IMG/VR virus record: IMGVR_UViG_3300007513_000001
Coordinates: 229,410 to 293,409 of that record
DNA: 64,000 bases
Reading direction: 5' to 3' (one strand)
Shown: positions 13,218-64,000 of the stretch, piece by piece
Numbering within the stretch: position 1 is the stretch's first letter
Layout: each line of letters begins with the position of its first letter
Position numbers and translations under genes: made by a program
Notes under the pieces: generated by a model
Database searches by the model: none
What the model saw: the letters and a program-made list of their open reading frames with translations, nothing else
What the model was told of the DNA's origin: nothing

Positions 13218-14258
13218 ATGCCCAAGAGTAAAAGATCCAACTTATTAAAAACGATAGACAGCATTCTGTTCGAAGACGTATGGCAAAAGTACGGTTCCGA
13301 ATATATGTCTCATCCAATGGATCAAAAAGATTTTGAAGATACCACAGTACCACCAAGCTTGCCCATACAAGCTTTGGATCAAATGGCAACTCAGCTTACA
13401 GTAGAGCGTCCGCCAGTTGAAGATCCCGATTATATTCCTGATGGCGTAGAAGAGCTTTCTAGATCTGCTAGCACCCTTGCGCAGCAAGTTCCGAGAGATC
13501 AAGTCGCTTTTTTCTACGAGAAGATAAAAAAAGATTTAGAAGTTGCAATTGAAAATGAAAACAATCCAGAAACAGTAACTACTAAAAAAGAAGAAGAAGA
13601 GGCGGAAGAAGCTTCGCAGGCAGTTGAAAAAATGGACGAAACTAAAAACTTAAGAAGATATTTAAAAGGTTTGCTAAAAGAACAAGGTCGAGGACCTTCT
13701 GATTGGTCTCAGTTTAAACTGGGTAAACATTATGATGAAGATGAGCCAGAGGAATGGGAACTAGAAGACGAAGATCCACAACCCGCTGGAGGCTCTAATA
13801 AAGATACTATAAAGGGCAAACACATAGCAAAATACTACGGGAAAGCTGGTCCATCAGGAGTAAACGTATCTAGCGATAGATTAATGCAGAATTTTCTCGC
13901 CCCACTTTTTAGCGTACCCTCAGAAGATTTAAGAGATGCAATGGATTATATTCGTTATTTCTATCGCGAGCACGCTACCGGAGAAGAGCCACAAGGATCT
14001 GAGCAGTCATTTGTGAGTTATGTTCTTAAAAAAGTGGTGAAAGATTTAGTTAAAAAGAATCCTGACATAACTCAAACTCTTTTGCCTGCGGTTGTACAGC
14101 ACGTTAAAGAAATGCCAGATAAACAATTTTCAAAACTCATAGACAAAGCTTCGAAAGAATCTTCTAGTGAAATTAAAGCTAGGGGAGAACTTGCGGATAC
14201 TTTAGAAAGAGAAGATCCAGAACAATTTGAGGTCCTTCAAGATTTAGGGCTAGCTTAA
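13218..14258 (+). CDS. hypothetical protein, probable virion component
   Basis: 346 aa; ILFED and internal NLRRYLKGLLKEQ motifs. Confidence 0.75.
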   Translation: MPKSKRSNLLKTIDSILFEDVWQKYGSEYMSHPMDQKDFEDTTVPPSLPIQALDQMATQLTVERPPVEDPDYIPDGVEELSRSASTLAQQVPRDQVAFFYEKIKKDLEVAIENENNPETVTTKKEEEEAEEASQAVEKMDETKNLRRYLKGLLKEQGRGPSDWSQFKLGKHYDEDEPEEWELEDEDPQPAGGSNKDTIKGKHIAKYYGKAGPSGVNVSSDRLMQNFLAPLFSVPSEDLRDAMDYIRYFYREHATGEEPQGSEQSFVSYVLKKVVKDLVKKNPDITQTLLPAVVQHVKEMPDKQFSKLIDKASKESSSEIKARGELADTLEREDPEQFEVLQDLGLA

Positions 14259-18158: not shown

Positions 18159-18177
18159 AATGTCCTCTTTGTTTTTT

Positions 18178-31799: not shown

Positions 31800-33818
31800 A
31801 TGAGAAGAAGAAGAAATCGTAAAATTTTAGATTCTATACTTTTAGAAGAATTACTTGTAGAAGCTAGCAATTCTATTAGTGCTAGCACCATGAGACAAGC
31901 TGTCCAAGAAGCCTTGAAAAGTACTGGTCAGTTTGATTTTCCGGAATCGTCTAACAGTCGTCAAAAAAGTCGCGGGATAAGGATAAACCCATCTTCCGCT
32001 TTAGATGAAAAAACTAAAGATGAAATCACCAGAGCGCTGAAAGACGCTGCGGCAACTGTGGGGTTGAAACTTGGAGAACTTGCGCTTCCAAAAAGCACGC
32101 CTGCAGGACGCAAAAAACCGGTTTCCGGAACCTTTTATTCTTGGCCGATCGCTAATATTAGAGAATGGCTTCAAAAATCTAGAGGGCCACAAATCAAAAC
32201 CGGCGCGTACTGGATTCAAAAAGTGCTAGGAGACCGCGATCTACCTTCTATTCATAAAGAGATGAGAACTAGTTCGAAGACATTGGACGATGAGTTTATT
32301 GTTGTCAACGCTCGGTCCCTTCAAAATAAGCTCTTCACCGGACAGGGCTTAGGCGAGTTGGCCGAGCACGCGACAGCTGCAGCTATCAATGGCGAGTCCG
32401 GGGCTGTAGACGCGTTAAATCCTTCGGGTGGATTCTATGATGCTGTTGAGGGCGCTATACTTAATAATTCTTGGAAAAAAGCAGACGATAATCTCAAGGC
32501 TTCTTTTGCAGAGGCTTATACAAAAATGCGGGATAAAGCTTCTGCTAACATAGGGAAGATTGCCGGACAGGGTTTCGATTTTGGCGCTGCTCAAGTTGAA
32601 GGTGGCGGTTCTTCTTACGATGTTGTGACAACAACTGCACTCGTCCACGTAAAATATGATGATCCAAGCCGACTTTCTGGATTGCAGCAAAAAACAGAAG
32701 ATCCTTCATCAGGTAAGGTTTCCAAAGCAAAGAAAAGTACGCCTGATGAAGAAGTCGCTTTTGGAGCTTCAGACAGATATTGGAAGAATCAACGCGCAGC
32801 TTTCAAAGAGGCTATAAACAAAGCAGGCGTAAGAAAAGACAAAGAGCTGTTAGGGGAATGGGGTTTTTATGAAGTTCTTTTAAACGGTGGGCCATATACT
32901 AAAATACAACAATCTACTGATCCGGCAATCGAAGCATGGAAAGCATCTGTTACACCTGGTGAAATCGCCGATAAATTAATTCAAGATATCAAACGCGAAT
33001 TCGGCGAGAGCCAAAGAAAAGACGCTCAAGGCAACCAAATGCCACAATTTTATTTTAGTTATTTTCCACTGGGAGAAGACGATTATAGGTTAAAAATAGA
33101 GTCAGTTGAATTTGGAGATACGCGGGGTCCTGCAGATATAGCAGGGTCAATTACTCTTTACTCTCCCGATGGACAGCAGACTACAGTAAGAAATTTAGAA
33201 ATAGTAATGAACCCCTCTTACAAGGGAAGAGAGGGAGGAACTCAAATAGGCAAAGTGTATAATGCAGTTTCTGGTAATAGAACTATTTTTGAAATAGAGT
33301 TTCGAGCCGAAAATTCAGCAAAGCCAATCCAGGTTCACCGAGGCGACGGTTTCAGTGTTGAGCCCGAATCTACTGATACAGCTATGGCCACAGTTTTAGT
33401 AAATGAAATTAGAAAGATGATTCGAAGAATTATTCGAGAAGAGAATGAAAGATCTAACATTTCGTTTTGTGATCGCGTAGCTGAATCTCTTCTCTTAGAA
33501 GAGCTTACAAAATCTGATAAAAAAGAAATCGAAAAAATGATTAAAAAGAGAATCGAAGCTGATAGATCTGAACAGAAAAAGATAATTCAAAAAGAGATGG
33601 CAGTTGAGCTTAAAAAGAATTTGGGCAAAGATTTTTTTGGAAATCCAAATAAGCTGCATAAAGCAATCCAAGAAATCGCGAATGAAGAATTGATGAAAGA
33701 ATTTTCTAAGGGCAAAGCAAGAGACGAAGTTGTTGATATTACTAAAAAGGTTCTTAAGAAATTTTATAGAGAAATTTCGTTTAGCTCGAATATCGTCATT
33801 GACAGAGTTAAACTCTAA
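31800..33818 (+). CDS. large multi-module hypothetical protein, probable virion component
   Basis: ILLEELLVEA near N-terminus; IRKMIRRIIREE and LLLEEL precede a ~100-aa C-terminal module. Confidence 0.8.
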   Translation: MRRRRNRKILDSILLEELLVEASNSISASTMRQAVQEALKSTGQFDFPESSNSRQKSRGIRINPSSALDEKTKDEITRALKDAAATVGLKLGELALPKSTPAGRKKPVSGTFYSWPIANIREWLQKSRGPQIKTGAYWIQKVLGDRDLPSIHKEMRTSSKTLDDEFIVVNARSLQNKLFTGQGLGELAEHATAAAINGESGAVDALNPSGGFYDAVEGAILNNSWKKADDNLKASFAEAYTKMRDKASANIGKIAGQGFDFGAAQVEGGGSSYDVVTTTALVHVKYDDPSRLSGLQQKTEDPSSGKVSKAKKSTPDEEVAFGASDRYWKNQRAAFKEAINKAGVRKDKELLGEWGFYEVLLNGGPYTKIQQSTDPAIEAWKASVTPGEIADKLIQDIKREFGESQRKDAQGNQMPQFYFSYFPLGEDDYRLKIESVEFGDTRGPADIAGSITLYSPDGQQTTVRNLEIVMNPSYKGREGGTQIGKVYNAVSGNRTIFEIEFRAENSAKPIQVHRGDGFSVEPESTDTAMATVLVNEIRKMIRRIIREENERSNISFCDRVAESLLLEELTKSDKKEIEKMIKKRIEADRSEQKKIIQKEMAVELKKNLGKDFFGNPNKLHKAIQEIANEELMKEFSKGKARDEVVDITKKVLKKFYREISFSSNIVIDRVKL

Positions 33819-37610: not shown

Positions 37611-37982
37611 ATGAAAATCACAAAAAGACAGCTTGGAAGAATTATTAGAGAAGCAATTATAGCCGAAGCCGGTTATGATCAGTTGCCTTTCAAAGATGGT
37701 CAACCATGGCGAGACCCAGACGTTCCATACGACGTGGCTGCAAACCTTCTTCAGCGAGATCTTGAACAAGCTGTTTCTGACGAACTAGATAGAGAGCTTA
37801 CTGACCAAGAAATGGATGATGCTGGTTATTTCGAAGAGGAGAGCTGGCCTTTAAGATTCGGCTATACAGACAAGACCGGTGAAGAAGTCGAGTTCATAGC
37901 CAACAATAGTGCCGATGCAGACGAATTTTTCGCAATGTTCTTTAAAGAATATGGAAGAGACCACCCCTACTCAGTGAATTAG
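37611..37982 (+). CDS. MKITKRQL-leader acidic protein
   Basis: MKITKRQLGRIIREAIIAEA followed by an acidic body. Confidence 0.8.
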   Translation: MKITKRQLGRIIREAIIAEAGYDQLPFKDGQPWRDPDVPYDVAANLLQRDLEQAVSDELDRELTDQEMDDAGYFEEESWPLRFGYTDKTGEEVEFIANNSADADEFFAMFFKEYGRDHPYSVN

Positions 37983-37990
37983 GAATTACA

Positions 37991-38230
37991 ATGAAAGTGA
38001 CAAAACAGCAGTTAAAAGAAATTATCAAAGAATACAAAGAATTATTGCGGCCAGGGCATGTAGATGGCCAACCGTGGAGCGGCACACTAGAAGATCTAGC
38101 GACTGTCCAAAGCAAGACTTGGGGACATGGAGAAGTTGTTGATAAAAAAGGCTACAGAGATATAGTCAACCACGCCAGAGATTTAACAGCTGGAAAAGCA
38201 AAAAGCCCAGTCAGAAAATACGGAAAGTAA
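37991..38230 (+). CDS. MKITK-type leader small protein
   Basis: MKVTKQQLKEIIKEY. Confidence 0.75.
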   Translation: MKVTKQQLKEIIKEYKELLRPGHVDGQPWSGTLEDLATVQSKTWGHGEVVDKKGYRDIVNHARDLTAGKAKSPVRKYGK

Positions 38231-49132: not shown

Positions 49133-49144
49133 AAAGAGAAAAAA

Positions 49145-49573
49145 ATGACAGTAGAAATCGGTAGCAAAGTAGTAGTTCATTATAAAGGAACATTAAACAA
49201 CGGTGAAGAATTCGACAGCTCATATTCAAGAAATGAGCCGCTAAGTTTTACCGTAGGAAACGGAGAAACAATCGCGGGTTTTGATTCTGCTGTTGTTGGG
49301 ATGTCTATTGGGGAAGTAAAAAATATTACCCTGAGCCCATCCGAAGGGTATGGGGACGTAAATCCAGAAGCGTTTCAAAAGATTTCAAAGAATCAGTTTC
49401 CGTCAGATTTTGAACCATCAGCTGGCACTTTAGTCGAGGGAATCAATACCCAAGGCCAAAAAGTTAGAGCCATCATTGCAGAAGTTTTTGACGAAGATTT
49501 AGTTCTTGATTTTAATCACCCGATGGCTGGAAAAGAGATGAATTTCGAAATTCAGCTAGTCAACTGCGAATAA
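49145..49573 (+). CDS. FKBP-type peptidyl-prolyl isomerase with insert-in-flap domain (SlyD/SlpA-like)
   Basis: VVVHYKGTL, FDSS, IAGFDSAVVGM, EGYG, LDFNHPMAGK; start moved to ATG 49145. Confidence 0.93.
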   Translation: MTVEIGSKVVVHYKGTLNNGEEFDSSYSRNEPLSFTVGNGETIAGFDSAVVGMSIGEVKNITLSPSEGYGDVNPEAFQKISKNQFPSDFEPSAGTLVEGINTQGQKVRAIIAEVFDEDLVLDFNHPMAGKEMNFEIQLVNCE

Positions 49574-53542: not shown

Positions 53543-54373
53543 ATGCGCTTTTTAAAAGAATACATTTCTCAAGTTTTAAAAGAAGCTACGAAATTACCAG
53601 ACGATTTTTATAAACCTTTAGAAAGCGCCATCGCATCATCTCAGTTTTGGACTTTTGCCAACGGTCCGGAAGACGCAGATTTCAATCGGGTCGGCGGAGA
53701 AGATGTAGACCAGACAGAAGCCGCAGAAGTTTTAGGGTACGCTCTTTTAGATTTTTTTAGATCTATAAAATATCCTCTTATACCTCTCGTAAGGTCTCCC
53801 GATGTCGGAGTAAAAGGTAACGATAAATTCTTGGTGGGAAAAGGTCACCGATATTATCCAGACAAGATTGTTGCTGGTGGACAAATGGGTTTGACTGATA
53901 CGGGTAGGAGAATTCTGTATCTAGACCTGATGGTTTATGATGAAGATATCGACACAAACGATATTTCTGCTAATTCTGTAGTTTCAGACGTCGCTTCAGT
54001 TGTAAGACATGAATTAATTCATGCAGATCAATATGATAAAAGAGCTAAAAAACAGAAGACAACGAGAGTAAAAGCTAAAAAAGCTTATGAGGAAGATGGA
54101 AGTATTGTAACTTCAGATGACAGACACCAATATCTTTCTTCGCACATCGAAATCGATGCATATGCTCATGAATTTGCAGAACAGTTGCTTCAAGATTTCG
54201 GTTTAGAAAGGGCGCTACAGTTAATAAGAACTTCTAACAAGGCAGAAGACTTGCCGGTTTCAGATCAATTAGAAGAATATCTAAAGGGGATATCAAGCAA
54301 AAAAGCTTTTAGAAATCTGATGGGAAAAGTTTACACTCAAATAATGGATTTAAAAGATAGAAAAATTTATTAA
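53543..54373 (+). CDS. leader-bearing zincin-like metalloprotease
   Basis: MRFLKEYISQVLKEA leader; RHELIHADQY (HExxH) and EIDAYA. Confidence 0.65.
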   Translation: MRFLKEYISQVLKEATKLPDDFYKPLESAIASSQFWTFANGPEDADFNRVGGEDVDQTEAAEVLGYALLDFFRSIKYPLIPLVRSPDVGVKGNDKFLVGKGHRYYPDKIVAGGQMGLTDTGRRILYLDLMVYDEDIDTNDISANSVVSDVASVVRHELIHADQYDKRAKKQKTTRVKAKKAYEEDGSIVTSDDRHQYLSSHIEIDAYAHEFAEQLLQDFGLERALQLIRTSNKAEDLPVSDQLEEYLKGISSKKAFRNLMGKVYTQIMDLKDRKIY

Positions 54374-54454
54374 TATTTTATTTTACTAAACATTATAGAT
54401 TTTCGGTATAAGCAGTTCATAAAATGATATTTAGTGATATCGAGTGGGAAAAAA

Positions 54455-55099
54455 ATGCAGCTAGTCAGAAAATATGTAAGAGCTCTTTTAATAGAGCAGC
54501 TAGAAGCGGAGCTTCAAACACCCTCTACGGGAGTCCCAAAAGGCGTTTGGACACTACTTCAGCCAGGTAGCCCAGAGTTTGAACAAGCTAGAATAGAACT
54601 AAATGATTTGATCACCATGGCTTATTCGAACATTGGCGGTCATTTAAAGATAACTAGTCCCGAAAGTTTGAACAGATATCAATTTTGGGTCGTCCAAGAT
54701 TTAGATGACGACGACCAAATAGATGTAGCCCTCTTTGGCAAGCCTGATATTGGTGGAAACAAACTTGGAGGAATAGGGCATGATGGATCTAGTGCTGCGA
54801 AGTCTGCATATAAAAACAAATCTGCAGAGCTTCGTTCTGGTGGAGAAGTAGCAGGAGTTGGAAATTGGTGGGGTGAAGTTAGTGGAAAAGCTGCATATGC
54901 AGTTTTGTCTCGTGGCGCACCCGCAATTACCGACGAAGCTCATGTCCGAACTCTTCTTGCTGGCGACCTTATCGTTTGGCACGGGATGCACCCAGATCCT
55001 GATGCTCCACCACTGTTTAAAGCTAACCCCGGATGGTACACTAAGACTTTTAGAGATGGTTCTGAACATACAAAAATAATAGCTGGGAGCCCGACGTGA
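54455..55099 (+). CDS. leader-bearing hypothetical protein
   Basis: MQLVRKYVRALLIEQ leader. Confidence 0.75.
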   Translation: MQLVRKYVRALLIEQLEAELQTPSTGVPKGVWTLLQPGSPEFEQARIELNDLITMAYSNIGGHLKITSPESLNRYQFWVVQDLDDDDQIDVALFGKPDIGGNKLGGIGHDGSSAAKSAYKNKSAELRSGGEVAGVGNWWGEVSGKAAYAVLSRGAPAITDEAHVRTLLAGDLIVWHGMHPDPDAPPLFKANPGWYTKTFRDGSEHTKIIAGSPT

Positions 55100-55344
55100 A
55101 AATCACAAAACTCCAACTCAGAAGAATAATTGCAGAAGCTATCGACTTAGATATCGAAAAGGGCGACGTTATTCTTACAGGAAGATTTAAAAATAAGAGA
55201 ACTATTGTAAAAGATATCGGAGTAGACGATTTAGGTCAACCCACTATTAATGGAATGAAAGTCCTGAATTTTAGAATTGAAAAACTTATGCCCAAAGATA
55301 AATGGAGCCAAAAATCTAAAGAAGCTCTTAAGGATAAAAAATGA
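55096..55344 (+). CDS. MKITK-leader small protein with SH3-like body
   Basis: MKITKLQLRRIIAEA; GDVILTGRFKN. Confidence 0.8.
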   Translation: MKITKLQLRRIIAEAIDLDIEKGDVILTGRFKNKRTIVKDIGVDDLGQPTINGMKVLNFRIEKLMPKDKWSQKSKEALKDKK

Positions 55345-55646
55345 GAATTACAAAACTGCAGCTTAAAAGAGTGATAAGAGAAGCTATAAACGAAAGCCAG
55401 TGGCAAGACAATATAGATGATTTTCTTTCTGACCGCGAAGCTAATCCTCACGATGGAGGCATGTACGGCGAAGATGAAGAAGACCGAAAATGGAGTGAAG
55501 CCGAATACGACCGCGGCTACCAGGACGGCTATGATGCTCTTCCACCCGCCGGCGACGCCTCAGCAGATTACGATGTGGGCTACGAAGACGGGAACAACGA
55601 TGGCAACGCTGAATCAGAGCGTGATTATGAAATGGGGTACAGATAA
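55341..55646 (+). CDS. MKITK-leader highly acidic protein with YxxGYxxG repeats
   Basis: MRITKLQLKRVIREA; YDRGYQDG, YDVGYEDG, YEMGY. Confidence 0.8.
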   Translation: MRITKLQLKRVIREAINESQWQDNIDDFLSDREANPHDGGMYGEDEEDRKWSEAEYDRGYQDGYDALPPAGDASADYDVGYEDGNNDGNAESERDYEMGYR

Positions 55647-55949
55647 ATGAAAATTACAAAGAGACAAATCAGAAGAATTATTAGAGAAGAGAAGCGAAAG
55701 GTCTTACGAGAGGGTATTACCCAAGAAGAGGCTTTGGCCGTCGCTATCCAAGACTACGTTATAGCGCTCCAAGACCAGATGGACTTCGACTCCGTCCAGG
55801 ACTTCCTACCAGATGTTATTGGTCAAGTCGAGGATTGGTTTGCAAATGAAGCTATCGCAGAAGAGTTCGCTGATGGCGAGAGCGGTGAATACGACCTTGA
55901 TCCGAATGATCAAGCATATGCTGCCGGTCGGCCATGGGAGCATAACTAA
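55647..55949 (+). CDS. MKITK-leader acidic protein
   Basis: MKITKRQIRRIIREE..VLREG. Confidence 0.8.
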   Translation: MKITKRQIRRIIREEKRKVLREGITQEEALAVAIQDYVIALQDQMDFDSVQDFLPDVIGQVEDWFANEAIAEEFADGESGEYDLDPNDQAYAAGRPWEHN

Positions 55950-55950
55950 A

Positions 55951-56352
55951 ATGAAAATCACGAAAAGACAGCTTAGAAGAATTATTAGAGAAGAGCTAGA
56001 TTACGGCGAGTTTCAGAGAGATCCAGAAGTTCAAGCGGCTCTACAAGCCGCAGGATTTAATCAAGACGGCAGCTTTGGAATGGAAGGCTATCCTGGACCA
56101 AGCGATTGGCAACTATACTCCCCGGAAAATATGGAGCAAGCCGAAAGGTGGATTGATGCTGCTATTGCAATGAATGATGCATTACGAAAAGCCGAAACTG
56201 CTTTAGACCGCGGCGAATATAGCTCAGCCCAAGATGCCTGGTATGATATAATTTATCCAGTGCAAAAAGAATATAGTGATACCGGGGCAGCCGATACAGA
56301 GGGCAGAGAGGTCGCCGGTGACTGGTTAGAACAAGCGGGATTTTCGTGGTAA
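55951..56352 (+). CDS. MKITK-leader acidic protein
   Basis: MKITKRQLRRIIREE; start moved from 55813. Confidence 0.8.
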   Translation: MKITKRQLRRIIREELDYGEFQRDPEVQAALQAAGFNQDGSFGMEGYPGPSDWQLYSPENMEQAERWIDAAIAMNDALRKAETALDRGEYSSAQDAWYDIIYPVQKEYSDTGAADTEGREVAGDWLEQAGFSW

Positions 56353-56353
56353 A

Positions 56354-56644
56354 ATGAAAATTACAAAAAGAAAACTCAGAAGAATTATCCGGGAAGAAAA
56401 AGAACTTCTTTTAAAAGAAGCAATTAAATTTCCGTGGGGCGAAACTGACCCAGAATATCCTGACGATAATGCTGTATTACCACCGACTAGAAAAATAGAA
56501 TTTAAGTGGGGGCCAGGTGGCTTGGAAATGGAAATGCGTATGAACGGAGAGAAAATTCTTGGTTTTACGCGGCAATCACAAGTCGACGAATTAATTGAAC
56601 AACTAGAGGGTCTACTTGCTGGACCAATGAGGACATCACCATGA
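56354..56644 (+). CDS. MKITK-leader protein
   Basis: MKITKRKLRRIIREE..LLKEA. Confidence 0.8.
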   Translation: MKITKRKLRRIIREEKELLLKEAIKFPWGETDPEYPDDNAVLPPTRKIEFKWGPGGLEMEMRMNGEKILGFTRQSQVDELIEQLEGLLAGPMRTSP

Positions 56645-56922
56645 AAATCACAAAAAGACAACTCAGAAGAATCATCAAAGAAGAAAGACGGCTCTTAAAA
56701 GAGCAGGGTGATCCTATCGCTGACCAGCTTCTTGGAGATTTCGTTACAGATTTAGCTAGTGGGCTAATGGATATGTATGATCCCCAAGACGCAAATCGAG
56801 TTGGATCTGAAGAAGATTTTTATGAAGCAGTAACGACAATAACAGTTGAGGTAGAAGACCTTGTACGCCAGCGATTAAATGATTTATGGTCTGGCGATTT
56901 AAAACTAGAGCTAATGAAATGA
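56641..56922 (+). CDS. MKITK-leader acidic protein
   Basis: MKITKRQLRRIIKEE..LLKEQ. Confidence 0.8.
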   Translation: MKITKRQLRRIIKEERRLLKEQGDPIADQLLGDFVTDLASGLMDMYDPQDANRVGSEEDFYEAVTTITVEVEDLVRQRLNDLWSGDLKLELMK

Positions 56923-57134
56923 AAATCACAAAAAGACAACTCCGGCGCCTGATTAAAGAAGTTCTACAAGAAGATAAGTCTGGGAAAGGAGCTTGCCCAG
57001 ATTCCGGGTGCATTAAGAAAAGTGGCGATGATTGGAGAATTATCAGTAACAAAACTGGTAAAATGTGGCCACAGAAATACAAAACGAGAAAAAGCGCAGA
57101 AAATGCGCTAGACGCTTATCATGCGAGTAGATGA
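56919..57134 (+). CDS. MKITK-leader basic protein
   Basis: MKITKRQLRRLIKEVLQE; ATG overlaps upstream TGA. Confidence 0.8.
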   Translation: MKITKRQLRRLIKEVLQEDKSGKGACPDSGCIKKSGDDWRIISNKTGKMWPQKYKTRKSAENALDAYHASR

Positions 57135-57166
57135 TATTCTAGAAAATAAAATCTAATAAAATTAAA

Positions 57167-59938
57167 ATGTTATCAATTAATGGAATACCGATCAAGATCA
57201 AAGTAGCTCGAGACGACAAATCTCGAGCTCATGGTCTTATGGGGGTAAAGAGTATGCCGGAAAACGAGGGTATGCTTTTCGTTTTTTCAGAGTCGAAACC
57301 TAGATCTTTTTGGATGAAAGATACTCTGTTTCCGCTTTCTATTGCTTACATTGACGAAGACCATAAGATTATCAACATTGAAGACATGAAGCCACACGAT
57401 ACTTCTAGTGTTGTCTCTGCTTCACCCGCGATATGCGCATTAGAAATGAACCGAGGGTGGTTTAGAAACAACGGCATCCGACCGGGAGACGCTGTTGACG
57501 GAATCAAAAGGGTTTATAGTGAATCTATTTTAAGGAAATCTATTAGACTATTGTTGAGAGAATCATCTACACCCACACGAACTTCATTTGATATTCCTAT
57601 ACCTGCTGATTTAAAAGATATTCATTCACGAATTAAGTACGCGGGTCGAGAATTATTTTTAGTTGGTGGTGCTGTTCGAGATGCGCTTATGGGTAAAACC
57701 CCTAAAGATTATGACGTAGCAACAAATGCGAGTCCTGAAGCCGTTATAAAAATATTGCAAAAAGATCCAAGTCTTAGGTTAGATTTAACTGGTAAACAGT
57801 TTGGAGTAGTGAGAGTAAAAACTAGTGACGGTGGAGAATACGAAATAGCTACTTTTAGAGAAGACATAGGAAAAGGTAAGTCTACAAAGGTAAAATTTTC
57901 TACGATTGAAAACGATGTTAAAAGAAGAGATTTAACAATTAATGCGCTGTTCTACGATATGGATTCTAAAGAAATCGTAGATTATGTCGGCGGAATTGAA
58001 GACATTGAAAACGGAATAATCCGAGCAGTAGGAAACCCAACTCAAAGATTTGACGAAGATAGAATTAGAATTTTGAGAGCCGTCAGATTTGCTGGGAGGA
58101 TGGGATCAAATTTAGACCCGCAAACTAAGCAAGCTATTTTAGACGACAACAAACTAATAGATACGGAAACTGGTCAGCAGATACCAGCTGATAGAATCAC
58201 TGAAGAGTTTGTAAAAGGGATAAAGTCAGCGCAAGATCCCGTTGGGTTTTTAGCTACTATAAATGACCTCGGTCTTTTTGATCAAATTTTGCCAGGCTTA
58301 GAGCTGAATTTTAGTACTTCTGGAACAACTGACCACATAGCTCAATTGGCTGCGTTGTTAAATAATAATTCTACAGATTCTATATCTTCGACTTTAAAAA
58401 GAATGAGATATTCTAACGATGAACGGAATATCATTAATTTTTTAATTAGTTTTGGAAATATTAATCGAGACACTGCTCCAGCGCTTAAAAAAGATTTCAA
58501 GCGCTACAAGATACCAGAAAGTCATTTAATAGAATATGCAGCGGCTTCAGACAGCCTTTCACAAAATAAACTGGATTCGTTTCTGCAGTTTGCTTCTGAG
58601 CCACCAGCTGGAAACTCTAAAGAATTAATGGCTAAAGGAATCAAAGGGCGAGATCTTGGTGTTGCTCTTGCCGCAGCAGAGGGAGATGCTTTTGCGAAGT
58701 TGATTGGCGAGTCAGTAATCGTTAGGCTTTTGACGGAAGCCGCCAAAGGACCACAAGATCTGCCTGACGGAATATTTGTACAGATCAAGCCCGACGATTG
58801 GGGCGTTCGAGTCGCTTATGTAAACAAGCTCAATAATGTGCTCTCGATGGAAGCTGACATTCGGGGCGTAGTTATGGTAGAAAGGCTTTCAGAAGATGAT
58901 ACGGATTTAGGGCCGTGCGACGACGCATGGATGATCGGATCTTCAGAGGCAGCCCCTGGTTGGGGCCCAATGCTTTACGATGTTGCTATGGAATATGCTA
59001 CTATGAAAGGCGGCGGGCTTATGGCAGATCGAGGTTCAGTCTCTCCAAAGGCTCGTAATGTGTGGGACTATTACATGAATAATCGCGGTGACGTTACAGG
59101 AATCCAGATGGATGACCGCAAAAACACTCTCACACCAGAGGAAGAAGATAATTGTAGCCAAAAGGTTGCCGGTCTTGACAATCGGTCACAACAGGATAAG
59201 TCGAAGCTATCCCCAGCCGGCACTTACAAGACAGATTGGGTTGACTCTCCTTTAAGCAAACGCTGGACAAAACCACCCACCACCATCGAGGCTTTAAGAG
59301 CTGCAGGCAAACTCGTCTGGCATGAAGCGGGCGATCATCTTCCACTCAGAGATTTGGATGCAGAAGGTCCAATCTTGCACTTGGAAAATTTCGTGAAAGA
59401 AATATTAAAAGAAGAAACTTTTAGAATTCTAATACCGAGCCCTCCTTCTGAAAAAGAAAGGTTAAAAGAGCTTCCATACGTAGTTCAAAAAAATCAAAAT
59501 CCGAGCTTTAGCCCAGAGATTTTGAAGACGTTAGATAAGAGAGTTTCAAAGTTATTTAATTTTTTAATAGTGAGCGCTGGATATCCGGACGTTTTTGAAA
59601 GAATAAAAGAAACAAAAAACAGCATAAAACCAATTATCAAGTTTCACAAAAATTATTTTGATTGTCTCCGACCAGATGAATTAGCGGATTCTTATGGGCT
59701 AGATTTTCCTGTTAGCTATTTGGACAGTGCGCAGAGTCCGTCTTATCCTTCGGGTCATACAACCCAAGCGTTTTACTTAGCACATGTTTTGGCAAGTGAA
59801 TATCCAGAAATTTCAGAAGATTTTTATAATTTAGCTCAAATGGTGGCCGACTCTAGAATAGAACATGGGGTGCATTTACCTTCAGACAATGAAGCGGGAA
59901 AACTTCTTGCAAAAACTATATACGGGTGGGAAGTTTAA
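57167..59938 (+). CDS. cca: four-domain fusion: DUF192 + CCA-adding enzyme + GNAT-like domain + PAP2 phosphatase
   Basis: GLM..EGMLF..FWMKDT..PLSIAYI..ALE (DUF192); VGGAVRD..KDYDVAT, EIATFR, RRDLTINA, FDEDRIRILRAVRF (class II CCA); GWGPMLYD..SVSPKARNVW (GNAT-like); K..RP, PSGH, SRIEHGVHLPSD (PAP2). Confidence 0.88.
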   Translation: MLSINGIPIKIKVARDDKSRAHGLMGVKSMPENEGMLFVFSESKPRSFWMKDTLFPLSIAYIDEDHKIINIEDMKPHDTSSVVSASPAICALEMNRGWFRNNGIRPGDAVDGIKRVYSESILRKSIRLLLRESSTPTRTSFDIPIPADLKDIHSRIKYAGRELFLVGGAVRDALMGKTPKDYDVATNASPEAVIKILQKDPSLRLDLTGKQFGVVRVKTSDGGEYEIATFREDIGKGKSTKVKFSTIENDVKRRDLTINALFYDMDSKEIVDYVGGIEDIENGIIRAVGNPTQRFDEDRIRILRAVRFAGRMGSNLDPQTKQAILDDNKLIDTETGQQIPADRITEEFVKGIKSAQDPVGFLATINDLGLFDQILPGLELNFSTSGTTDHIAQLAALLNNNSTDSISSTLKRMRYSNDERNIINFLISFGNINRDTAPALKKDFKRYKIPESHLIEYAAASDSLSQNKLDSFLQFASEPPAGNSKELMAKGIKGRDLGVALAAAEGDAFAKLIGESVIVRLLTEAAKGPQDLPDGIFVQIKPDDWGVRVAYVNKLNNVLSMEADIRGVVMVERLSEDDTDLGPCDDAWMIGSSEAAPGWGPMLYDVAMEYATMKGGGLMADRGSVSPKARNVWDYYMNNRGDVTGIQMDDRKNTLTPEEEDNCSQKVAGLDNRSQQDKSKLSPAGTYKTDWVDSPLSKRWTKPPTTIEALRAAGKLVWHEAGDHLPLRDLDAEGPILHLENFVKEILKEETFRILIPSPPSEKERLKELPYVVQKNQNPSFSPEILKTLDKRVSKLFNFLIVSAGYPDVFERIKETKNSIKPIIKFHKNYFDCLRPDELADSYGLDFPVSYLDSAQSPSYPSGHTTQAFYLAHVLASEYPEISEDFYNLAQMVADSRIEHGVHLPSDNEAGKLLAKTIYGWEV

Positions 59939-59939
59939 G

Positions 59940-62414
59940 ATGACTGTGTTACGTGATCACATAAGAGCGCTGCTTGCGGAAGAAACAAAAGCATCCCGTG
60001 CAGTTCCGGAACTGGGCCTCTGGTTACCTAAAAACTTTAACGATCTCATAGAAAAGAAATACCCAGCCTATGCAATCCCAGATGAAGAGTGGGACGAAGG
60101 GTCTATTTCTTGGTGGATGCATGCAGAGTCGATCGAGGACGCGTGGCAGAAGAGAAATCAAGAAATTTCTGGCGACAAAACAATGGCCGTAGCAAAGACT
60201 GCATCCGGTGTTGGTGGTGGCATGACCGGTGTGGGTATCAGCGGCCTCCTCTACGCTGGTGGCCTCATCGTCGACGCTCTTGGCGGCGGCGGTATGGCAT
60301 CGCTTGCTTTAAAACTGCTTGGAGCCAAGGGCATTTTTCTTTCGATCGGCCATGAAGCCCTTAAAAAAGGTGGGTTTGATACCAAGCTAAGGCGAGAATT
60401 TCAGAAAGAAATTAGGTGGGATGAAAATCTTCTAAAAGGTATAAAAGAATCTGAGGCAGAGGCAGTCGAAAATGCTTACATGGAGTATTTTTGGGATATG
60501 ATTAAAAATAAGCCTCACGCGCACTTTGGGGTGGAGTTCGAAGACATAAACGATTTTTACCTGAGGACATCAGAAAGTGATATGCTACAGCCGACTGGAA
60601 CGAGGAAAGTTCGTGTGCCATCTCAGGACGAAAAAGATCTAGCTAAGCTTATAGCCACAAACCCTTCTGCTGGTGCTTCAAATAGGTTAAGGGGTCGTGA
60701 CTCGAGAGAAGCCCAAGCAGGAATGAGACAATTGTCGCAGAATGAACTGCGGAAATATATTCGTTCCCTACTAAGTGAATCCACCCAATACGACGATCAC
60801 TTCAAGCCGCTCATGGATTCTGGTTATGACGGTATCAAGCAAGCAATAGAATTAGCAGATAGTCTCGGTATGTCGCCTCGAGAATTACCGTGGAATGATG
60901 ATACGTTAAACGCTTATTTGTTTTATGCTCCAGGTGAAGATACACTTGAAAAGCTGACCAAAATTGGCTGGACTACCGAAGAATGGGTAGAACAGGGCCG
61001 AAGAGCTTTTGAAGACCGTGAGAGAGAATTAGGCTTGCGGGAATCAGCTGATTATGACGATGATTATTCATCTTCAATGGAGGCCATGCTTGCAATGCTG
61101 GTCGTTGATCAAGCTCAGGATAATGGAGCCGAACAGGCATTGATGATGTTTGAACCAATGGCATTGAGTGATGATCCAGAATATCAATTAGATCTAGATT
61201 TGTTAGCAGCAGAAATTTCTCAGAGATTGCAGCCCCATACAGAAAAATACCAGAAATATGATGGCGTGGACAAGTTCGGTGTTCTGCTTGTGTGGCAATC
61301 TACCGTAGATGAGATAATCAAATTTGTAACTGGAGATGGCATCAACCGAAGCTTTCGGCCTTCTTGGAAATCTTTCGAAAGAGAGGAAGATGTATCAGAA
61401 ATGCTGGGGCCAGTGTTAAGGCAAACAGTGACTGCGTGGAAAAAGAAAGAGCAAGGCAAGCCTGCAATGGCAGACCACGAGGAAGAGTGGGTTGTTCGCG
61501 AGTGTGTAAGAAGAATATTGACAGAGCAGATTAATTCAGTTTTAGACAAGATCGTTAAGCTTGTTGAGACAGGTCATGGAAATCAAGCTTTCGAAATCAT
61601 GGTTATGATGCCAGAAGAATTAGACACGGCCATGGTGATCACTACACTTCGAAAAGAATTAGCTAATTTACGCGCCATAACACGATCACCAGAGCCACAC
61701 CAGTGGGCTTACTCTAGATATAGAAAAAAGCTTCCTGATCCAGAGTGGGATAAGTTTGTTAAGTTTGCCCGTGGCTTTTCTGATTTTATCGGTTACCAAG
61801 GAAGTATGCTCGATCCGAATAATCATAACCCTCAACATCGGGCGCGCCCGCGCGATCCACTTGCCAAAACACATGACAGGTGGCCTTCAGCCGAAGATAT
61901 GATACAGATGCTACAGCAAAAAATTGGCGGTGAGACTATTAAAGAAGCAGCACGCCCGAACTATGTAACTGGCCATGGAATATTTGATGATCGGAGCCCA
62001 ACTGAAAATGAAAAGAAATTACTTGATGTGTTTGTTGGAAGTGGCGCCCAGGCTTTGGAGTTAGCTGAATTAACTGGCCACGATGAGCTAGCATCTTGGA
62101 TGCACAAGATAATAGATCCCATCCGTGAGAGAATTAAAACAATTGAAGATACAGTGGCGCTTATACAGTCTGATGAAATTACAGAGCGATGGAAGATAGA
62201 AGATATTTCGATAAAACTTGAAAATGAGGCTGAAGAAATACTTCGTGGCTACTATCCGTCAAGCAAGCTACACGACAGCTGGGAAGACAGTGTATTCGAA
62301 ATGGCGGATTATATTTGGTACCACGGTGTAGATTACGATAGCTACAACGTCGCCTCAGAAACCAAGTCAAAACAAGACTTAGACAAGATAAAGATGTGGG
62401 CAGGTGTCGCATGA
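59940..62414 (+). CDS. multi-module polyprotein-like ORF of leader-separated helical modules
   Basis: MTVLRDHIRALLAEE leader; internal LRKYIRSLLSES, LGLRES, VRECVRRILTEQ, TIKEA; start moved from 59865. Confidence 0.8.
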   Translation: MTVLRDHIRALLAEETKASRAVPELGLWLPKNFNDLIEKKYPAYAIPDEEWDEGSISWWMHAESIEDAWQKRNQEISGDKTMAVAKTASGVGGGMTGVGISGLLYAGGLIVDALGGGGMASLALKLLGAKGIFLSIGHEALKKGGFDTKLRREFQKEIRWDENLLKGIKESEAEAVENAYMEYFWDMIKNKPHAHFGVEFEDINDFYLRTSESDMLQPTGTRKVRVPSQDEKDLAKLIATNPSAGASNRLRGRDSREAQAGMRQLSQNELRKYIRSLLSESTQYDDHFKPLMDSGYDGIKQAIELADSLGMSPRELPWNDDTLNAYLFYAPGEDTLEKLTKIGWTTEEWVEQGRRAFEDRERELGLRESADYDDDYSSSMEAMLAMLVVDQAQDNGAEQALMMFEPMALSDDPEYQLDLDLLAAEISQRLQPHTEKYQKYDGVDKFGVLLVWQSTVDEIIKFVTGDGINRSFRPSWKSFEREEDVSEMLGPVLRQTVTAWKKKEQGKPAMADHEEEWVVRECVRRILTEQINSVLDKIVKLVETGHGNQAFEIMVMMPEELDTAMVITTLRKELANLRAITRSPEPHQWAYSRYRKKLPDPEWDKFVKFARGFSDFIGYQGSMLDPNNHNPQHRARPRDPLAKTHDRWPSAEDMIQMLQQKIGGETIKEAARPNYVTGHGIFDDRSPTENEKKLLDVFVGSGAQALELAELTGHDELASWMHKIIDPIRERIKTIEDTVALIQSDEITERWKIEDISIKLENEAEEILRGYYPSSKLHDSWEDSVFEMADYIWYHGVDYDSYNVASETKSKQDLDKIKMWAGVA
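60783..60893 (+). repeat. 37-codon module duplicated at 63456..63566
   Basis: TQYDDHFKPLMDSGYDGIKQAIELADSLGMSPRELPW vs TEYDSHFKPLMDSGFDGIKQAMELADSLGITSQELPW (29/37 identical). Confidence 0.9.
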
Positions 62415-62935
62415 ACCCACTCCGTGAATACATAAGGGAAATGCTTACTGAAGCCAGCACAGAGGAGAAGACCGCTTCGATCAACGATATGCTCAATGCT
62501 GAAAAAGAGGTAGCCAAGCTTACCAATATATTTTGGGGCAGCGGCGCCCAGGGGCTCCAGCTGGCTGAGATGGTGGGAGCGACTGATAAAGATGGGATCC
62601 CGCTTTCTGAGATTTTTGATGAAATTGTTAATGATGTCGTTTGGCTAATTGAAGAGGTGGAAAAGTTCGGAGAAGAATTTAAGAAAACACCACCCAAAAC
62701 CCATTGGGCCGCTACAAACAGTGACAAGCACATGGAGACGATTCAACGGCAAATCATAGATGAGATCGCAATGACAGGATTATATCCCGGTATCTCAGAC
62801 GAACTACACGATCATCTTGTACATGTTGCTACGAAAGCTGTTTGGAGCATTGTGCCTCACCCATGGGGTAAAGTGGATACCGAGCAAGGTGCAAGATCAT
62901 TGGCTTGGCTCAAGAAATGGGCAGGTGTCGCGTGA
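62411..62935 (+). CDS. leader-bearing helical protein, paralog of the last module of 59940..62414
   Basis: MNPLREYIREMLTEA; FWGSGAQGLQLAE; KKWAGVA end shared. Confidence 0.8.
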   Translation: MNPLREYIREMLTEASTEEKTASINDMLNAEKEVAKLTNIFWGSGAQGLQLAEMVGATDKDGIPLSEIFDEIVNDVVWLIEEVEKFGEEFKKTPPKTHWAATNSDKHMETIQRQIIDEIAMTGLYPGISDELHDHLVHVATKAVWSIVPHPWGKVDTEQGARSLAWLKKWAGVA

Positions 62936-63417
62936 ACCTGCTCCGTGAATACATAAGAGTTCTAGTCGAGAAAAGTGAAGGTGAAGACCCTGTGCGCGAA
63001 GACAGAATGAAAGTATCCCAGATGTTCTGGAACATCGGCGCAGGTATGGGAATTCGGCTGGCAGAAATGACTCCAGGCTTGGAAGATCTTGCTGCTGAGT
63101 TTGAAGAGTTTCGGATTCTCGTGGAGGAGTTTATTGATCTTAGTGAGAGATTTATGGCCCAACCTCCGAAAGACAGCGCTGTGCAATGGACCATCCAGAT
63201 ACGCACAATTAAAAAGAATATTCAAACAAGAGCAGCAGAACTGCACTGGCACCGGCCGGGTCACGCAGCCGATAAAGAACTCGATTCTGCGCACCGCCGC
63301 TGGGTGCAGATGTTTTTAGAGGCACTCCGGTGGGCACACTGGACCCATACTCAAGGCGCACACGCACATTCAGACCAAGAAGAATATGAAGCTCTAAAAG
63401 ACTGGATAGTTGTATGA
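62932..63417 (+). CDS. leader-bearing helical protein, same paralog family
   Basis: GTG start overlapping TGA; MNLLREYIRVLVE; MFWNIGAGMGIRLAE. Confidence 0.8.
   Translation: MNLLREYIRVLVEKSEGEDPVREDRMKVSQMFWNIGAGMGIRLAEMTPGLEDLAAEFEEFRILVEEFIDLSERFMAQPPKDSAVQWTIQIRTIKKNIQTRAAELHWHRPGHAADKELDSAHRRWVQMFLEALRWAHWTHTQGAHAHSDQEEYEALKDWIVV
62933..62969 (+). repeat. 37-bp exact direct repeat at gene starts (second copy 63415..63451)
   Basis: tgaacctgctccgtgaatacataagagttctagtcga; partial third copy at 62412. Confidence 0.95.
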
Positions 63418-64000
63418 ACCTGCTCCGTGAATACATAAGAGTTCTAGTCGAAGCCACCGAATACGACTCTCACTTCAAACCACTCATGGACTCAGGCTTC
63501 GATGGCATCAAGCAAGCAATGGAACTAGCCGATAGTCTGGGCATAACCTCTCAAGAATTGCCTTGGGACATGGGTTCGATTGATGAGTACGCATGGGAGA
63601 TGCGGGATGACGTACCATGGCCAGAAGTTTTAGAACCCACCGGTTGGACTGAAAAAGATTATCGAAACGCTTTTGATGCTAAATGGAAGAGCATCCCCGG
63701 TGCACAACCTCATTGGGACTTGACCGAGCAGAAGGTTCTAGCTCAAGGGATGTGTTTTCCGTTCGCAATTGAGAAAGCTGAAGAGTGGTTTGAAGACCAT
63801 TTTACGAAGGGTGGCCCTGGTCGCAAGCCAAAGAGGCATCCGGCTCTGAACAACATGGACAAGTTCAAGGTTGTGCATGGGAAGGTAACTGACAAGTGGG
63901 AGAAGCCACCGAAACCTATCGTTCATGCATGGGTGGAAATGGGTGACTTGGTCTTTGATGACCAAACGAAACACACGAAACCCGACGGCATTCCGAAAGA
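63414..64000 (+). CDS. leader-bearing two-module protein ending in a transglutaminase/papain-like domain (runs off right edge)
   Basis: Not in ORF track; MNLLREYIRVLVEA, duplicated module, DLTEQ, then GMCFPFA...VVHG...HAWVE..D..FD. Confidence 0.7.
   Translation, partial: MNLLREYIRVLVEATEYDSHFKPLMDSGFDGIKQAMELADSLGITSQELPWDMGSIDEYAWEMRDDVPWPEVLEPTGWTEKDYRNAFDAKWKSIPGAQPHWDLTEQKVLAQGMCFPFAIEKAEEWFEDHFTKGGPGRKPKRHPALNNMDKFKVVHGKVTDKWEKPPKPIVHAWVEMGDLVFDDQTKHTKPDGIPK

What the first reader, a model, noticed from the sequence alone, without database searches (positions are those of the whole stretch)
53543..64000. Capsid-targeting / protease-cleavage leader system loading a cargo of small proteins and enzymes
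Seen: 13 of 14 consecutive genes start with an amphipathic basic helix carrying [LIV]-x-E (MRFLKEYISQVLKEA, MQLVRKYVRALLIEQ, MKITKRQLRRIIREE x7 variants, MTVLRDHIRALLAEE, MNPLREYIREMLTEA, MNLLREYIRVLVE x2); the fourteenth (57167) carries it internally three times; bodies are unrelated. Known: T4 internal proteins have a 10-aa capsid targeting sequence (MKTYQEFIAE) removed by prohead protease gp21 after (L/I)-x-E, and IPI* is injected to block GmrSD. Inference: an expanded, portable address tag that routes many cargos (peptidase, CCA enzyme, phosphatase, transglutaminase-like, acidic mimics) into the head for ejection at time zero.
Basis: partly seen in the sequence, partly recalled or inferred. 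Interest (0 to 1): 0.88.

Follow-up and report, generated by a model that had tools for sequence, protein, structure and literature searches.

The report
Head-targeting leader tag on phage cargos
A marine jumbo T4-like phage puts the same 14-residue N-terminal tag, ending in the cut site of its T4-type head protease, on more than 20 otherwise unrelated proteins, most likely to load them into the capsid; the tag marks thousands of candidate packaged proteins in uncultured phages.

Summary
Thirteen of 14 consecutive + strand genes (53543-64000) start with a 14-residue amphipathic leader ending in [LIV]-x-E. A matrix scan gives 24 hits in the window against 1.1 in shuffles. The array runs on to about window-equivalent 68,275.

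Conservation is at the peptide level: it starts at the start codon, stops after about 14 codons, and is rich in synonymous changes.

The window comes from a 293-kb marine viral contig. That contig also carries a T4-type head module: large terminase, gp20 portal, Peptidase_S77 (gp21) prohead protease and two gp23 capsid genes. In smaller related contigs, leader genes sit directly beside the S77 protease. A leader profile matches 8,116 protein clusters.

The 923-aa ORF is a fusion of leader-tagged modules. Its internal leader copies align with the N-terminal leaders of stand-alone homologues.

Best reading: a T4-type capsid-targeting propeptide, removed by the head protease after Glu14 and greatly expanded here, including on a CCA-adding-type enzyme. 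Packaging, cleavage and ejection are inferred, not shown. Similarity to T4's own targeting sequence is only marginal. I rate it a new variant of a known kind, interest about 0.7.

The parts
53543..54373 (+). Leader gene 1 (276 aa). Class-2 leader MRFLKEYISQVLKE; the body has an HELIH motif at 54008-54022.
   Evidence: 22.5 bits. No Pfam, PHROG, NCBIfam or PDB hit. Body pI 5.2.
54455..55099 (+). Leader gene 2 (214 aa). Class-2 leader MQLVRKYVRALLIE.
   Evidence: 20.6 bits. No family hit.
55096..57134 (+). Seven small class-1 leader genes, consensus MKITKRQLRRIIxE. Starts: 55096 (GTG), 55341, 55647, 55951, 56354, 56641, 56919. Lengths 71-133 aa. Five bodies are acidic and two basic.
   Evidence: 24-34 bits each; synonymous codon changes; pI. 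The homologues of 56641 keep the leader while their bodies diverge.
57167..59938 (+). 923-aa multi-module ORF, in order: DUF192 (aa 9-110), leader copy (aa 119-132), CCA-adding/poly(A) polymerase-type nucleotidyltransferase (aa 163-378), degenerate junction leader (aa 514-524), module 3 of unknown function, and PAP2 phosphatase (aa 825-915).
   Evidence: Pfam, NCBIfam, matrix scores, split homologues and the alignment.
57521..57562 (+). Internal leader copy 1 of the 923-aa ORF (ESILRKSIRLLLRE).
   Evidence: 14.7 bits. It aligns column for column with the N-terminal leader MNLLREYIRELVES of stand-alone CCA-type homologues.
58706..58738 (+). Junction leader remnant (GESVIVRLLTE) between the CCA domain and module 3. 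It keeps the L-T-E motif followed by AAKG.
   Evidence: -0.6 bits alone. It aligns with VGEVRKYVRELLTE-type junction leaders and with the MNLLREYIRELLTEAAKG start of stand-alone module-3 genes.
59940..62414 (+). 824-aa ORF with an N-terminal class-2 leader (MTVLRDHIRALLAE) and two internal leader copies at 60738-60779 and 61485-61526. It looks like another fusion of tagged modules.
   Evidence: 23.4, 20.9 and 13.7 bits. Its segments are paralogous to the genes at 62411 and 63414.
62411..62935 (+). Leader gene (174 aa), MNPLREYIREMLTE.
   Evidence: 30.3 bits.
62932..63417 (+). Leader gene (161 aa, GTG start), VNLLREYIRVLVEK.
   Evidence: 26.9 bits.
63414..64000 (+). Leader gene (515 aa in full, cut by the window end), MNLLREYIRVLVEA. 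The array continues outside the window to about 68,275.
   Evidence: 27.4 bits.
37611..38230 (+). Two further class-1 leader genes outside the flagged region: 37611-37982 (MKITKRQLGRIIRE) and 37991-38230 (MKVTKQQLKEIIKE).
   Evidence: 26.1 and 20.0 bits.
13641..13682 (+). Internal leader-like copy (TKNLRRYLKGLLKE) inside the 346-aa ORF 13218-14258.
   Evidence: 17.4 bits. Not followed up.
33399..33440 (+). Internal leader-like copy (VNEIRKMIRRIIRE) inside the 672-aa ORF 31800-33818.
   Evidence: 15.5 bits. Not followed up.

Best explanation
The leader is a capsid-targeting propeptide of the T4 kind. It is a 14-residue amphipathic helix with hydrophobic residues at positions 3/4, 7/8 and 11/12, basic residues at 5 and 9, and Glu at 14.

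Proposed mechanism:
- The leader docks the newly made protein onto the scaffolding core of the assembling prohead.
- The phage's gp21-type (Peptidase_S77) serine protease then cuts after the [LIV]-x-Glu14 motif and frees the mature cargo inside the head.
- In the two long ORFs, leader copies at the module junctions would be cut in the same way, so these ORFs would act as polyproteins of several cargos.
- The cargos are small, mostly acidic proteins; a CCA-adding-type nucleotidyltransferase; a PAP2 phosphatase; DUF192; and a widespread unknown module. By analogy with T4 they are probably ejected with the DNA.

Shown here: the tag, its modularity, its peptide-level selection, its link to T4-type head genes, and the protease in the same genome.

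Inferred: docking, cleavage, presence in the virion, and ejection.
For: **1. The leader is real and selected as a peptide.**
- 24 matrix hits against 1.1 in shuffles, all on the + strand.
- Nucleotide identity is 26-31% in the 30 bases upstream, 77% (class 1) and 57% (class 2) across the 14 leader codons, and 26-29% downstream.
- Class 1 shows 76 synonymous against 65 non-synonymous codon differences.
- Met1, Gln7, Leu8, Ile12 and Glu14 are invariant in 32 class-1 leaders from different contigs. These were picked with a DNA pattern that already fixes Met1, Gln7, Ile12 and Glu14 and limits position 8 to NTN codons, so that invariance is partly circular.
- Glu14 is also invariant in 33 class-2 family members gathered by body homology, which is independent of that pattern.

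**2. The window's own genome has the machinery.** The contig IMGVR_UViG_3300007513_000001 carries:
- T4-type large terminase;
- Portal_T4, E = 4e-76;
- Peptidase_S77, Pfam E = 5e-24;
- an acidic scaffold-like protein;
- two Gp23 capsid genes, E = 8e-75.

The protease matches the solved T4 gp21 structure 5jbl at 1.4e-13.

**3. Neighbours of leader genes elsewhere.** In that lineage one to three leader genes sit directly beside the protease.

**4. Modularity.**
- Module 3 of the 923-aa ORF occurs as a stand-alone gene with a class-1 or a class-2 leader.
- 114 of 120 members of that family start with MNLLREYIRELLTEAAKG-like leaders.
- 46 of 120 close CCA-domain homologues start with a leader, and 37 have a second leader right after the domain, followed by differing modules.

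**5. Match to T4 knowledge (PMC9026906).**
- T4 targeting sequences are 10-19 residue N-terminal propeptides.
- gp21 cuts after L/I-X-E, often at a Glu-Ala bond.
- The class-2 leaders of the module-3 family end in L-T-E followed by Ala.

**6. Structure.** AlphaFold2 models the leader as a detached helix (residues 3-13, low pLDDT) in front of a confident fold. The hydrophobic moment is in the top 2% (class 1) and top 5.5% (class 2) of shuffles.

**7. A cultured relative.** Flavobacterium phage immuto has leader-like starts, one of them in a gene just upstream of its S77 protease.
Against: - There are no virion proteomics, cleavage data or expression timing for any member.
- T4's own targeting sequence scores only marginally against the leader matrices (z about 2.2-2.7, top 1% or so of windows). 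Homology of the tag itself is therefore unproven.
- In the jumbo lineage of the window, none of 80 S77 loci has a strong leader gene within 2.5 kb of the protease. The array lies elsewhere on the contig, between dnaK and metabolic genes.
- Most bodies are acidic (pI 4.1-5.4), unlike the basic T4 internal proteins.
- The 923-aa ORF has no leader at its very N-terminus, so it would need an internal copy for targeting. Nothing I read on T4 covers that case.
- [LI]-x-E is a short, common motif.
Confidence: 0.62

Rival explanations
1. The leader does target proteins to the prohead, but the tagged proteins are scaffold or core 'filler', like T4 gp67, gp68 and gp22. They are chopped up and lost or kept as peptides at maturation. 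They are not functional cargo delivered to the next host.
For: - In the smaller-contig lineage the leader genes occupy the gp67/gp68 position beside the protease.
- Most bodies are short and very acidic.
- T4 core proteins are cut into many fragments (PMC9026906).
- The head module of the window's genome has a leader-like small ORF right after the protease (L164:11065-11496).
Against: - Leaders are attached to intact enzyme domains. The CCA-type nucleotidyltransferase is tagged in 46 of 120 close homologues, and the conserved module-3 fold in 114 of 120. Tagging enzymes only to destroy them makes little sense.
- The array turns over between relatives, as expected for conflict genes rather than structural ones.
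Confidence: 0.17
2. The leader is an interaction tag unrelated to the capsid. It might be a client or recruitment tag for the phage's own chaperones (DnaK, DnaJ, GroEL), an oligomerisation helix, or an address for some other phage-built compartment.
For: - The array starts 45 bases after dnaK (51624-53498), and the window also encodes DnaJ and GroEL.
- Tubulin-like genes recur near leader genes in 10 loci.
- The tag is a basic amphipathic helix, a common kind of binding element.
Against: - The invariant C-terminal [LIV]-x-E is unexplained by this idea.
- The recurrent neighbours are terminase, portal and S77 protease.
- Leader copies sit at module junctions of fusion proteins, which points to a cleavage role.
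- No shell protein of a nucleus-like compartment turned up in the parts of the genome I scanned, but I did not look for one specifically.
Confidence: 0.1
3. The repeat is a nucleotide-level element at gene starts, such as a translation-initiation enhancer, a recombination site or a promoter-linked box, and not a functional peptide.
For: The class-1 codons are A-rich and 77% identical across copies.
Against: - There is no conservation upstream of the start codon (26-31% identity).
- There are many synonymous differences.
- Class 2 uses different codons but keeps the same hydrophobic pattern and Glu14.
- In-frame internal copies exist.
- The leader is kept across bodies only 35-40% identical.
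Confidence: 0.02

Closest known systems
T4 capsid targeting sequence on internal proteins IPI, IPII, IPIII and Alt, removed by the gp21 prohead protease
   Same: - A short N-terminal propeptide on otherwise unrelated proteins.
- It ends in (L/I)-x-E.
- The genome encodes a gp21-type Peptidase_S77 with a T4-type portal, terminase and gp23 capsid genes.
- The tagged set differs between relatives, as in the T-even phages (PMC3012670, PMC9026906).
   Different: - 14 residues in two sequence classes, with only marginal similarity to the T4 sequence.
- More than 20 tandem tagged genes, against three or four in T4.
- Cargos are mostly acidic and include enzyme domains.
- Leader copies occur inside long fusion ORFs.
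- The host phage is a distant, uncultured marine jumbo relative of T4. Its closest cultured relatives by capsid protein are Microcystis phage Mel-JY01 and Flavobacterium phage immuto.
Inner-body and ejection proteins of phiKZ-like giant phages (phiKZ, 201phi2-1, SPN3US), processed by a diverged gp21 homologue
   Same: - Many head-internal proteins, some of them paralogous.
- N-terminal propeptides cut after Glu, sometimes at several redundant sites.
- A large mass of packaged and ejected proteins in a jumbo head (PMC9026906, PMC7411985).
   Different: - The motif there is S/A-x-E. Here the P3 residue is Leu, Ile or Val, as in T4.
- No shared, nearly invariant 14-residue leader is described for those phages.
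- The protease here matches the T4-type Pfam family directly.
Polyvalent proteins of phages and conjugative elements (multi-domain proteins delivered with the DNA), as cited in PMC7824862
   Same: Long ORFs that join several unrelated enzyme domains likely to act early in the new host. A phage peptidase is proposed to process them.
   Different: Here the joints carry a recognisable leader that also serves as the N-terminal tag of single-module genes. The domains found here are CCA-type nucleotidyltransferase, PAP2 and DUF192.
Cargo-loading peptides of encapsulins and encapsulation peptides of bacterial microcompartments
   Same: A short helical tag that brings diverse cargos into a protein shell. 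The encapsulin shell has the same fold as phage capsids. This comparison rests on my own knowledge.
   Different: Those tags are not removed by a protease and serve a permanent cellular compartment. No such shell operon is present here.

Membership tests
T4-type capsid targeting sequence / internal protein system | Short (10-19 aa) N-terminal propeptide shared by proteins with unrelated mature parts | tested here: met
   A 14-aa leader sits on 13 of the 14 consecutive genes in the flagged region, on six more just beyond the window end and on two at 37611 and 37991. The bodies are mostly unrelated by BLASTP.
T4-type capsid targeting sequence / internal protein system | Propeptide ends in the gp21 cleavage motif (L/I)-x-E | tested here: met
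   Ile12 and Glu14 are invariant in 32 class-1 leaders, but the DNA pattern used to collect them already fixes both. In 33 class-2 family members gathered by body homology, Glu14 is invariant and Leu12 is present in at least 90%. The motif itself is taken from PMC9026906.
T4-type capsid targeting sequence / internal protein system | Same genome encodes a gp21-type (Peptidase_S77) prohead protease within a T4-type head module | tested here: met
   L164 lies on the window's own contig and carries Peptidase_S77 (5e-24), Portal_T4 (4e-76), Terminase_6N and two Gp23 genes. It matches PDB 5jbl at 1.4e-13, with His and Ser at the two positions where that crystal chain has Ala. That these are the catalytic residues is my inference.
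T4-type capsid targeting sequence / internal protein system | Sequence similarity of the leader to the T4 IPII/IPIII/IPI targeting sequences | tested here: inconclusive
   The T4 N-termini fetched from NC_000866 score -0.6 (IPII and IPIII) and -6.1 (IPI) on the class-2 matrix. The null mean is -13.1 with sd 4.6, so IPII and IPIII fall in about the top 1% of windows.
T4-type capsid targeting sequence / internal protein system | [quoted passage not shown] | not testable with these tools
   This needs virion mass spectrometry or in vitro cleavage. There is only indirect support: adjacency to the protease in 16 loci and a detached leader helix in the model.
T4-type capsid targeting sequence / internal protein system | The tag is sufficient to direct a foreign protein into the head (portability) | not testable with these tools
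   There is a natural surrogate only. The same module carries class-1 or class-2 leaders in different genomes, and 8,116 clusters carry the leader.
T4-type capsid targeting sequence / internal protein system | Mature proteins are ejected into the host with the DNA | not testable with these tools
   No data. This is inferred from T4 (PMC9026906).
phiKZ-like inner-body / ejection protein system | Propeptides cut at S/A-x-E | tested here: not met
   The P3 residue is Ile, Leu or Val in all leaders.
phiKZ-like inner-body / ejection protein system | Virion and non-virion multisubunit RNA polymerases and a nuclear-shell protein | not tested
   Only about 97 kb of the 293-kb contig was read. None was seen there, and a sigma-70-type factor is present instead.
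Encapsulin cargo-loading peptide | Cargo gene next to an encapsulin shell gene, with a tag that is not cleaved | tested here: not met
   No shell gene lies near the array. The capsid genes are gp23-type within a full phage head module.

The most novel reading that the evidence does not exclude
The leader defines a very large, unannotated set of proteins that distant T4-like phages of the sea and other habitats load into their heads and eject with the DNA. The set includes protease-processed polyproteins and a tRNA 3'-end repair (CCA-adding-type) enzyme that would be active before any phage gene is expressed. If so, a single 14-residue tag could be used to mine thousands of first-minute counter-defence and takeover proteins from metagenomes.
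Probability: 0.35. Interest if true: 0.85.

Novelty: new variant of a known kind. Interest (0 to 1): 0.7.

Why it matters
Proteins that a phage carries in its head act before any phage gene is read. T4 IPI*, which blocks a restriction enzyme, is an example. Such proteins are hard to recognise from sequence.

Here a short, nearly invariant tag marks them. It matches at least 8,116 protein clusters (at 50% identity) in public metagenomes, and no Pfam or PHROG family covers it. If the tag really means 'packaged', three things follow.
- It gives a simple sequence handle for finding candidate injected counter-defence proteins in uncultured phages.
- It shows that tagged cargos can be strung into polyproteins.
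- It suggests that RNA-repair-type enzymes may be delivered together with the DNA.

It may also offer a second natural targeting tag for loading foreign proteins into phage heads in the laboratory.

Tried and rejected
- **Cultured phage matches.** BLASTN of the array against 50,697 cultured phage records found nothing. TBLASTN of the bare leaders found nothing either, because the queries are too short.
- **Literature.** A full-text search for the leader letters found no paper.
- **A head module inside the window.** I suspected 6.8-17.6 kb (466, 228, 219 and 524-aa ORFs). I rejected it: the 228-aa ORF is superoxide-dismutase-like, and the rest have no hits.
- **The Trypsin_2 gene at 20656-21447 (- strand) as the leader peptidase.** Rejected. 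It has an N-terminal signal-like sequence, and its three neighbours have lipoprotein-like starts, so it is probably exported.
- **T4 late promoter TATAAATA.** Not enriched in the window or in the head module.
- **A TMTAGAAW box.** It lies upstream of the terminase, portal, scaffold-like gene and 57167. It is not significant in the window (26 against 21 expected) and borderline in L164.
- **Fold search of the module-3 model.** Nothing significant, only weak acetyltransferase-like rows.
- **PHROG scan of leader proteins next to the protease, and of the two unknown neighbour families.** No hits.
- **Leader genes next to the protease in the jumbo lineage.** Found in 0 of 80 loci.
- **NCBIfam and PDB sequence searches of the bodies.** Only the nucleotidyltransferase and PAP2 were recognised.


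Full report
**1. What the window is**

The window is identical to marine metagenome contigs. It comes from IMG/VR contig IMGVR_UViG_3300007513_000001, 293,409 bp. Nearly all genes are on the + strand.

The window encodes:
- DnaK, DnaJ, GroEL and an FKBP-type protein;
- a sigma-70-type factor and asparagine synthase;
- four tRNAs;
- a C5 DNA methylase and a 5-hmdU-kinase-like protein.

It has no nucleotide match among cultured phages and almost no PHROG hits.

**2. The observation**

Thirteen of the 14 consecutive genes from 53543 to the window end begin with a 14-residue leader. There are two classes:
- class 1: MKITKRQLRRIIxE, seven genes;
- class 2: MNLLREYIRELLxE-like, six genes.

The two classes align without an offset. 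Both have hydrophobic residues at positions 3/4, 7/8 and 11/12, basic residues at 5 and 9, and [LIV]-x-E at 12-14.

A matrix built from the leaders gives 24 hits of at least 9 bits in the six-frame translation. Shuffles give 1.1. All hits are on the + strand.

Further copies:
- Two more leader genes lie at 37611 and 37991.
- In-frame internal copies lie at 13641, 33399, 57521, 60738 and 61485.
- The array continues past the window. Loci L001 and L007 are identical to the window where they overlap. They add six more leader-bearing genes up to about window-equivalent 68,275. A PALP enzyme gene and an IMPDH-family gene follow.

**3. Peptide or DNA element?**

The evidence points to a peptide.
- Pairwise nucleotide identity is 26-31% in the 30 bases upstream of the start codon.
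- It is 77% (class 1) and 57% (class 2) across the 14 leader codons.
- It is 26-29% just downstream.
- Class 1 pairs differ by 76 synonymous and 65 non-synonymous codons.
- The hydrophobic moment is high: top 2% and 5.5% of shuffles.
- In an AlphaFold2 model of one cargo (pLDDT 80, pTM 0.83), the leader is a separate, low-confidence helix (residues 3-13) in front of the folded body.

**4. How widespread it is**

- Homologues of the small gene at 56641 keep the leader while the body diverges.
- Many unrelated small marine proteins share only the leader, and some carry two copies.
These hold 234 leader ORFs with a median length of 106 aa.
- A profile of 32 class-1 leaders matched 8,116 clusters (E up to 0.001) among 1.84 billion representative proteins. 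The best hits have two or three leader copies each.
- A relative on a 289.8-kb contig has 17 leader-type starts among 18 consecutive genes, with partly different bodies.

**5. The link to T4-type head assembly**

I clustered the large ORFs next to leader genes in the IMG/VR stretches. The recurrent families were:

| Neighbour family | Loci |
|---|---|
| T4-type large terminase | 36 |
| gp20 portal | 24 |
| Peptidase_S77, the T4 gp21 prohead protease family | 16 |
| SbcCD-like nuclease | 14 |
| Primase | 11 |
| Tubulin-like protein | 10 |

Three unknown families also recur.

In those loci the order is terminase, portal, two unknown genes, one to three leader genes, then the protease. Sometimes more leader genes follow the protease. 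This is the position of the core proteins gp67 and gp68 in T4.

I then searched with the protease of a 273-kb relative. That search found an S77 protease on the window's own contig, at 161,480-182,079 (L164). It sits in a full T4-type head module:
- terminase and Portal_T4 (4e-76);
- Peptidase_S77 (5e-24; PDB 5jbl, T4 gp21, 1.4e-13);
- an acidic scaffold-like protein rich in [LI]-x-E;
- two Gp23 capsid genes.

At least five jumbo contigs carry both leader arrays and this protease.

The closest cultured relatives by capsid protein are Microcystis phage Mel-JY01, the Flavobacterium immuto phages, RM378 and XacN1. Phage immuto has MKKSQLRQIIKEA and MKKSQIVKAVQEVLEE starts. The second is in a small gene two genes upstream of its S77 protease.

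**6. The long ORFs are fusions of tagged modules**

The 923-aa ORF contains, in order: DUF192, a class II nucleotidyltransferase (CCA-adding or poly(A) polymerase type, below NCBIfam equivalog cut-offs), an unknown module, and PAP2.

*First internal copy.* Residues 119-132 align column for column with the N-terminal leader of stand-alone homologues of the nucleotidyltransferase. Of the 120 closest homologues:
- 46 start with a leader, of either class;
- 37 have a second leader right after the domain;
- after that second leader come different modules in different proteins.

*Second internal copy.* Residues 514-524 are a shortened version of that junction leader. It keeps L-T-E followed by AAKG.

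*Module 3.* The module after the junction is a stand-alone gene in other contigs, with a class-1 or a class-2 leader, and it has a stand-alone paralogue in the same genome. In that family 114 of 120 members start with MNLLREYIRELLTEAAKG-like leaders, although the bodies fall to 35-40% identity.

**7. Mechanism**

What is known for T4 (PMC9026906, PMC3012670):
- The targeting sequence is a 10-19 residue N-terminal propeptide that binds the scaffolding core.
- gp21 removes it after L/I-X-E.
- The internal proteins of T-even phages are diverse, and only this sequence is conserved among them.

The features found here fit that scheme point by point. The same family of protease is present in the same genome. 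I therefore take the leader to be a prohead-targeting propeptide cut after Glu14, and the junction copies to be cut sites that release modules.

Docking, cleavage, presence in virions and ejection are all inferred.

**8. Points against**

- The T4 sequence itself, fetched from NC_000866, scores only marginally on the leader matrices.
- In the window's lineage the array is not next to the protease.
- The bodies are mostly acidic.
- No timing signal was found.

**9. Cargo functions**

Apart from the nucleotidyltransferase, PAP2 and DUF192, the bodies have no family, PDB or significant fold match. The first gene has only an HExxH motif.

A packaged CCA-type enzyme would fit the RNA-repair theme described for jumbo phages (PMC7824862). 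That reading is speculation.

**10. Verdict**

This is a new, much expanded variant of the T4 capsid-targeting system, in a distant, uncultured lineage.

Noticed in passing
window 17583-21447 (- strand): This is the only minus-strand cassette of annotated genes in the window. It holds a Trypsin_2 peptidase with a signal-like N-terminus and three proteins with lipoprotein-like starts. One of those has Ig-like and VWA domains. A similar Trypsin_2 gene with a minus-strand neighbour is present in the 289.8-kb relative (L009:14118-17094). It looks like a set of exported proteins, possibly acting on the host envelope.
   Followed up: partly
window 25373-26992, 35546-36367, 49025-49573, 51624-53498: The phage carries a full chaperone set: GroEL-type chaperonin, DnaJ, an FKBP-type isomerase and DnaK. 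The dnaK gene ends 45 bases before the first leader gene.
   Followed up: no
L164:14790-16688 and L164:16782-18671 (same contig as the window): Two adjacent Gp23-family capsid genes of 632 and 629 aa have identical sequence over the first 100 residues printed. They could be a recent duplication or a gp23/gp24-like pair.
   Followed up: no
window 60001-64000: G+C rises to 0.45-0.47 in the class-2 leader part of the array, against 0.35-0.42 in the rest of the window.
   Followed up: no
window 57138-57145; L164:5458, 7108, 12999: A TMTAGAAW box lies 29-78 bases upstream of the 923-aa ORF and of the terminase, portal and scaffold-like genes. It is not significant in the window and borderline in the head module. 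It may be a shared promoter element.
   Followed up: partly
L027 (IMGVR_UViG_GVMAG-S-1030632-100_000001): Three leader genes lie on a 17-kb contig that was binned as a giant-virus metagenome-assembled genome. This is probably a phage contig placed in the wrong bin.
   Followed up: no
L042:1009-2145 and nine other loci: A tubulin/FtsZ-family gene (Pfam 33.5 bits, at the cut-off) recurs near leader genes in 10 IMG/VR loci.
   Followed up: no
window 833-3456, 4415-4984, 6363-6764: Several nucleotide-metabolism genes cluster here. Two have Pfam support: a 5-hmdU DNA kinase-like protein and a C5 cytosine methylase. A thymidine-kinase-like and a deaminase-like ORF were judged by eye only. Together they hint at modified DNA bases.
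   Followed up: no
window 13218-14258 and 31800-33818: Two large ORFs with no family hit carry strong in-frame internal leader copies, at 13641 and 33399. They may be further fusions of tagged modules far from the main array.
   Followed up: no
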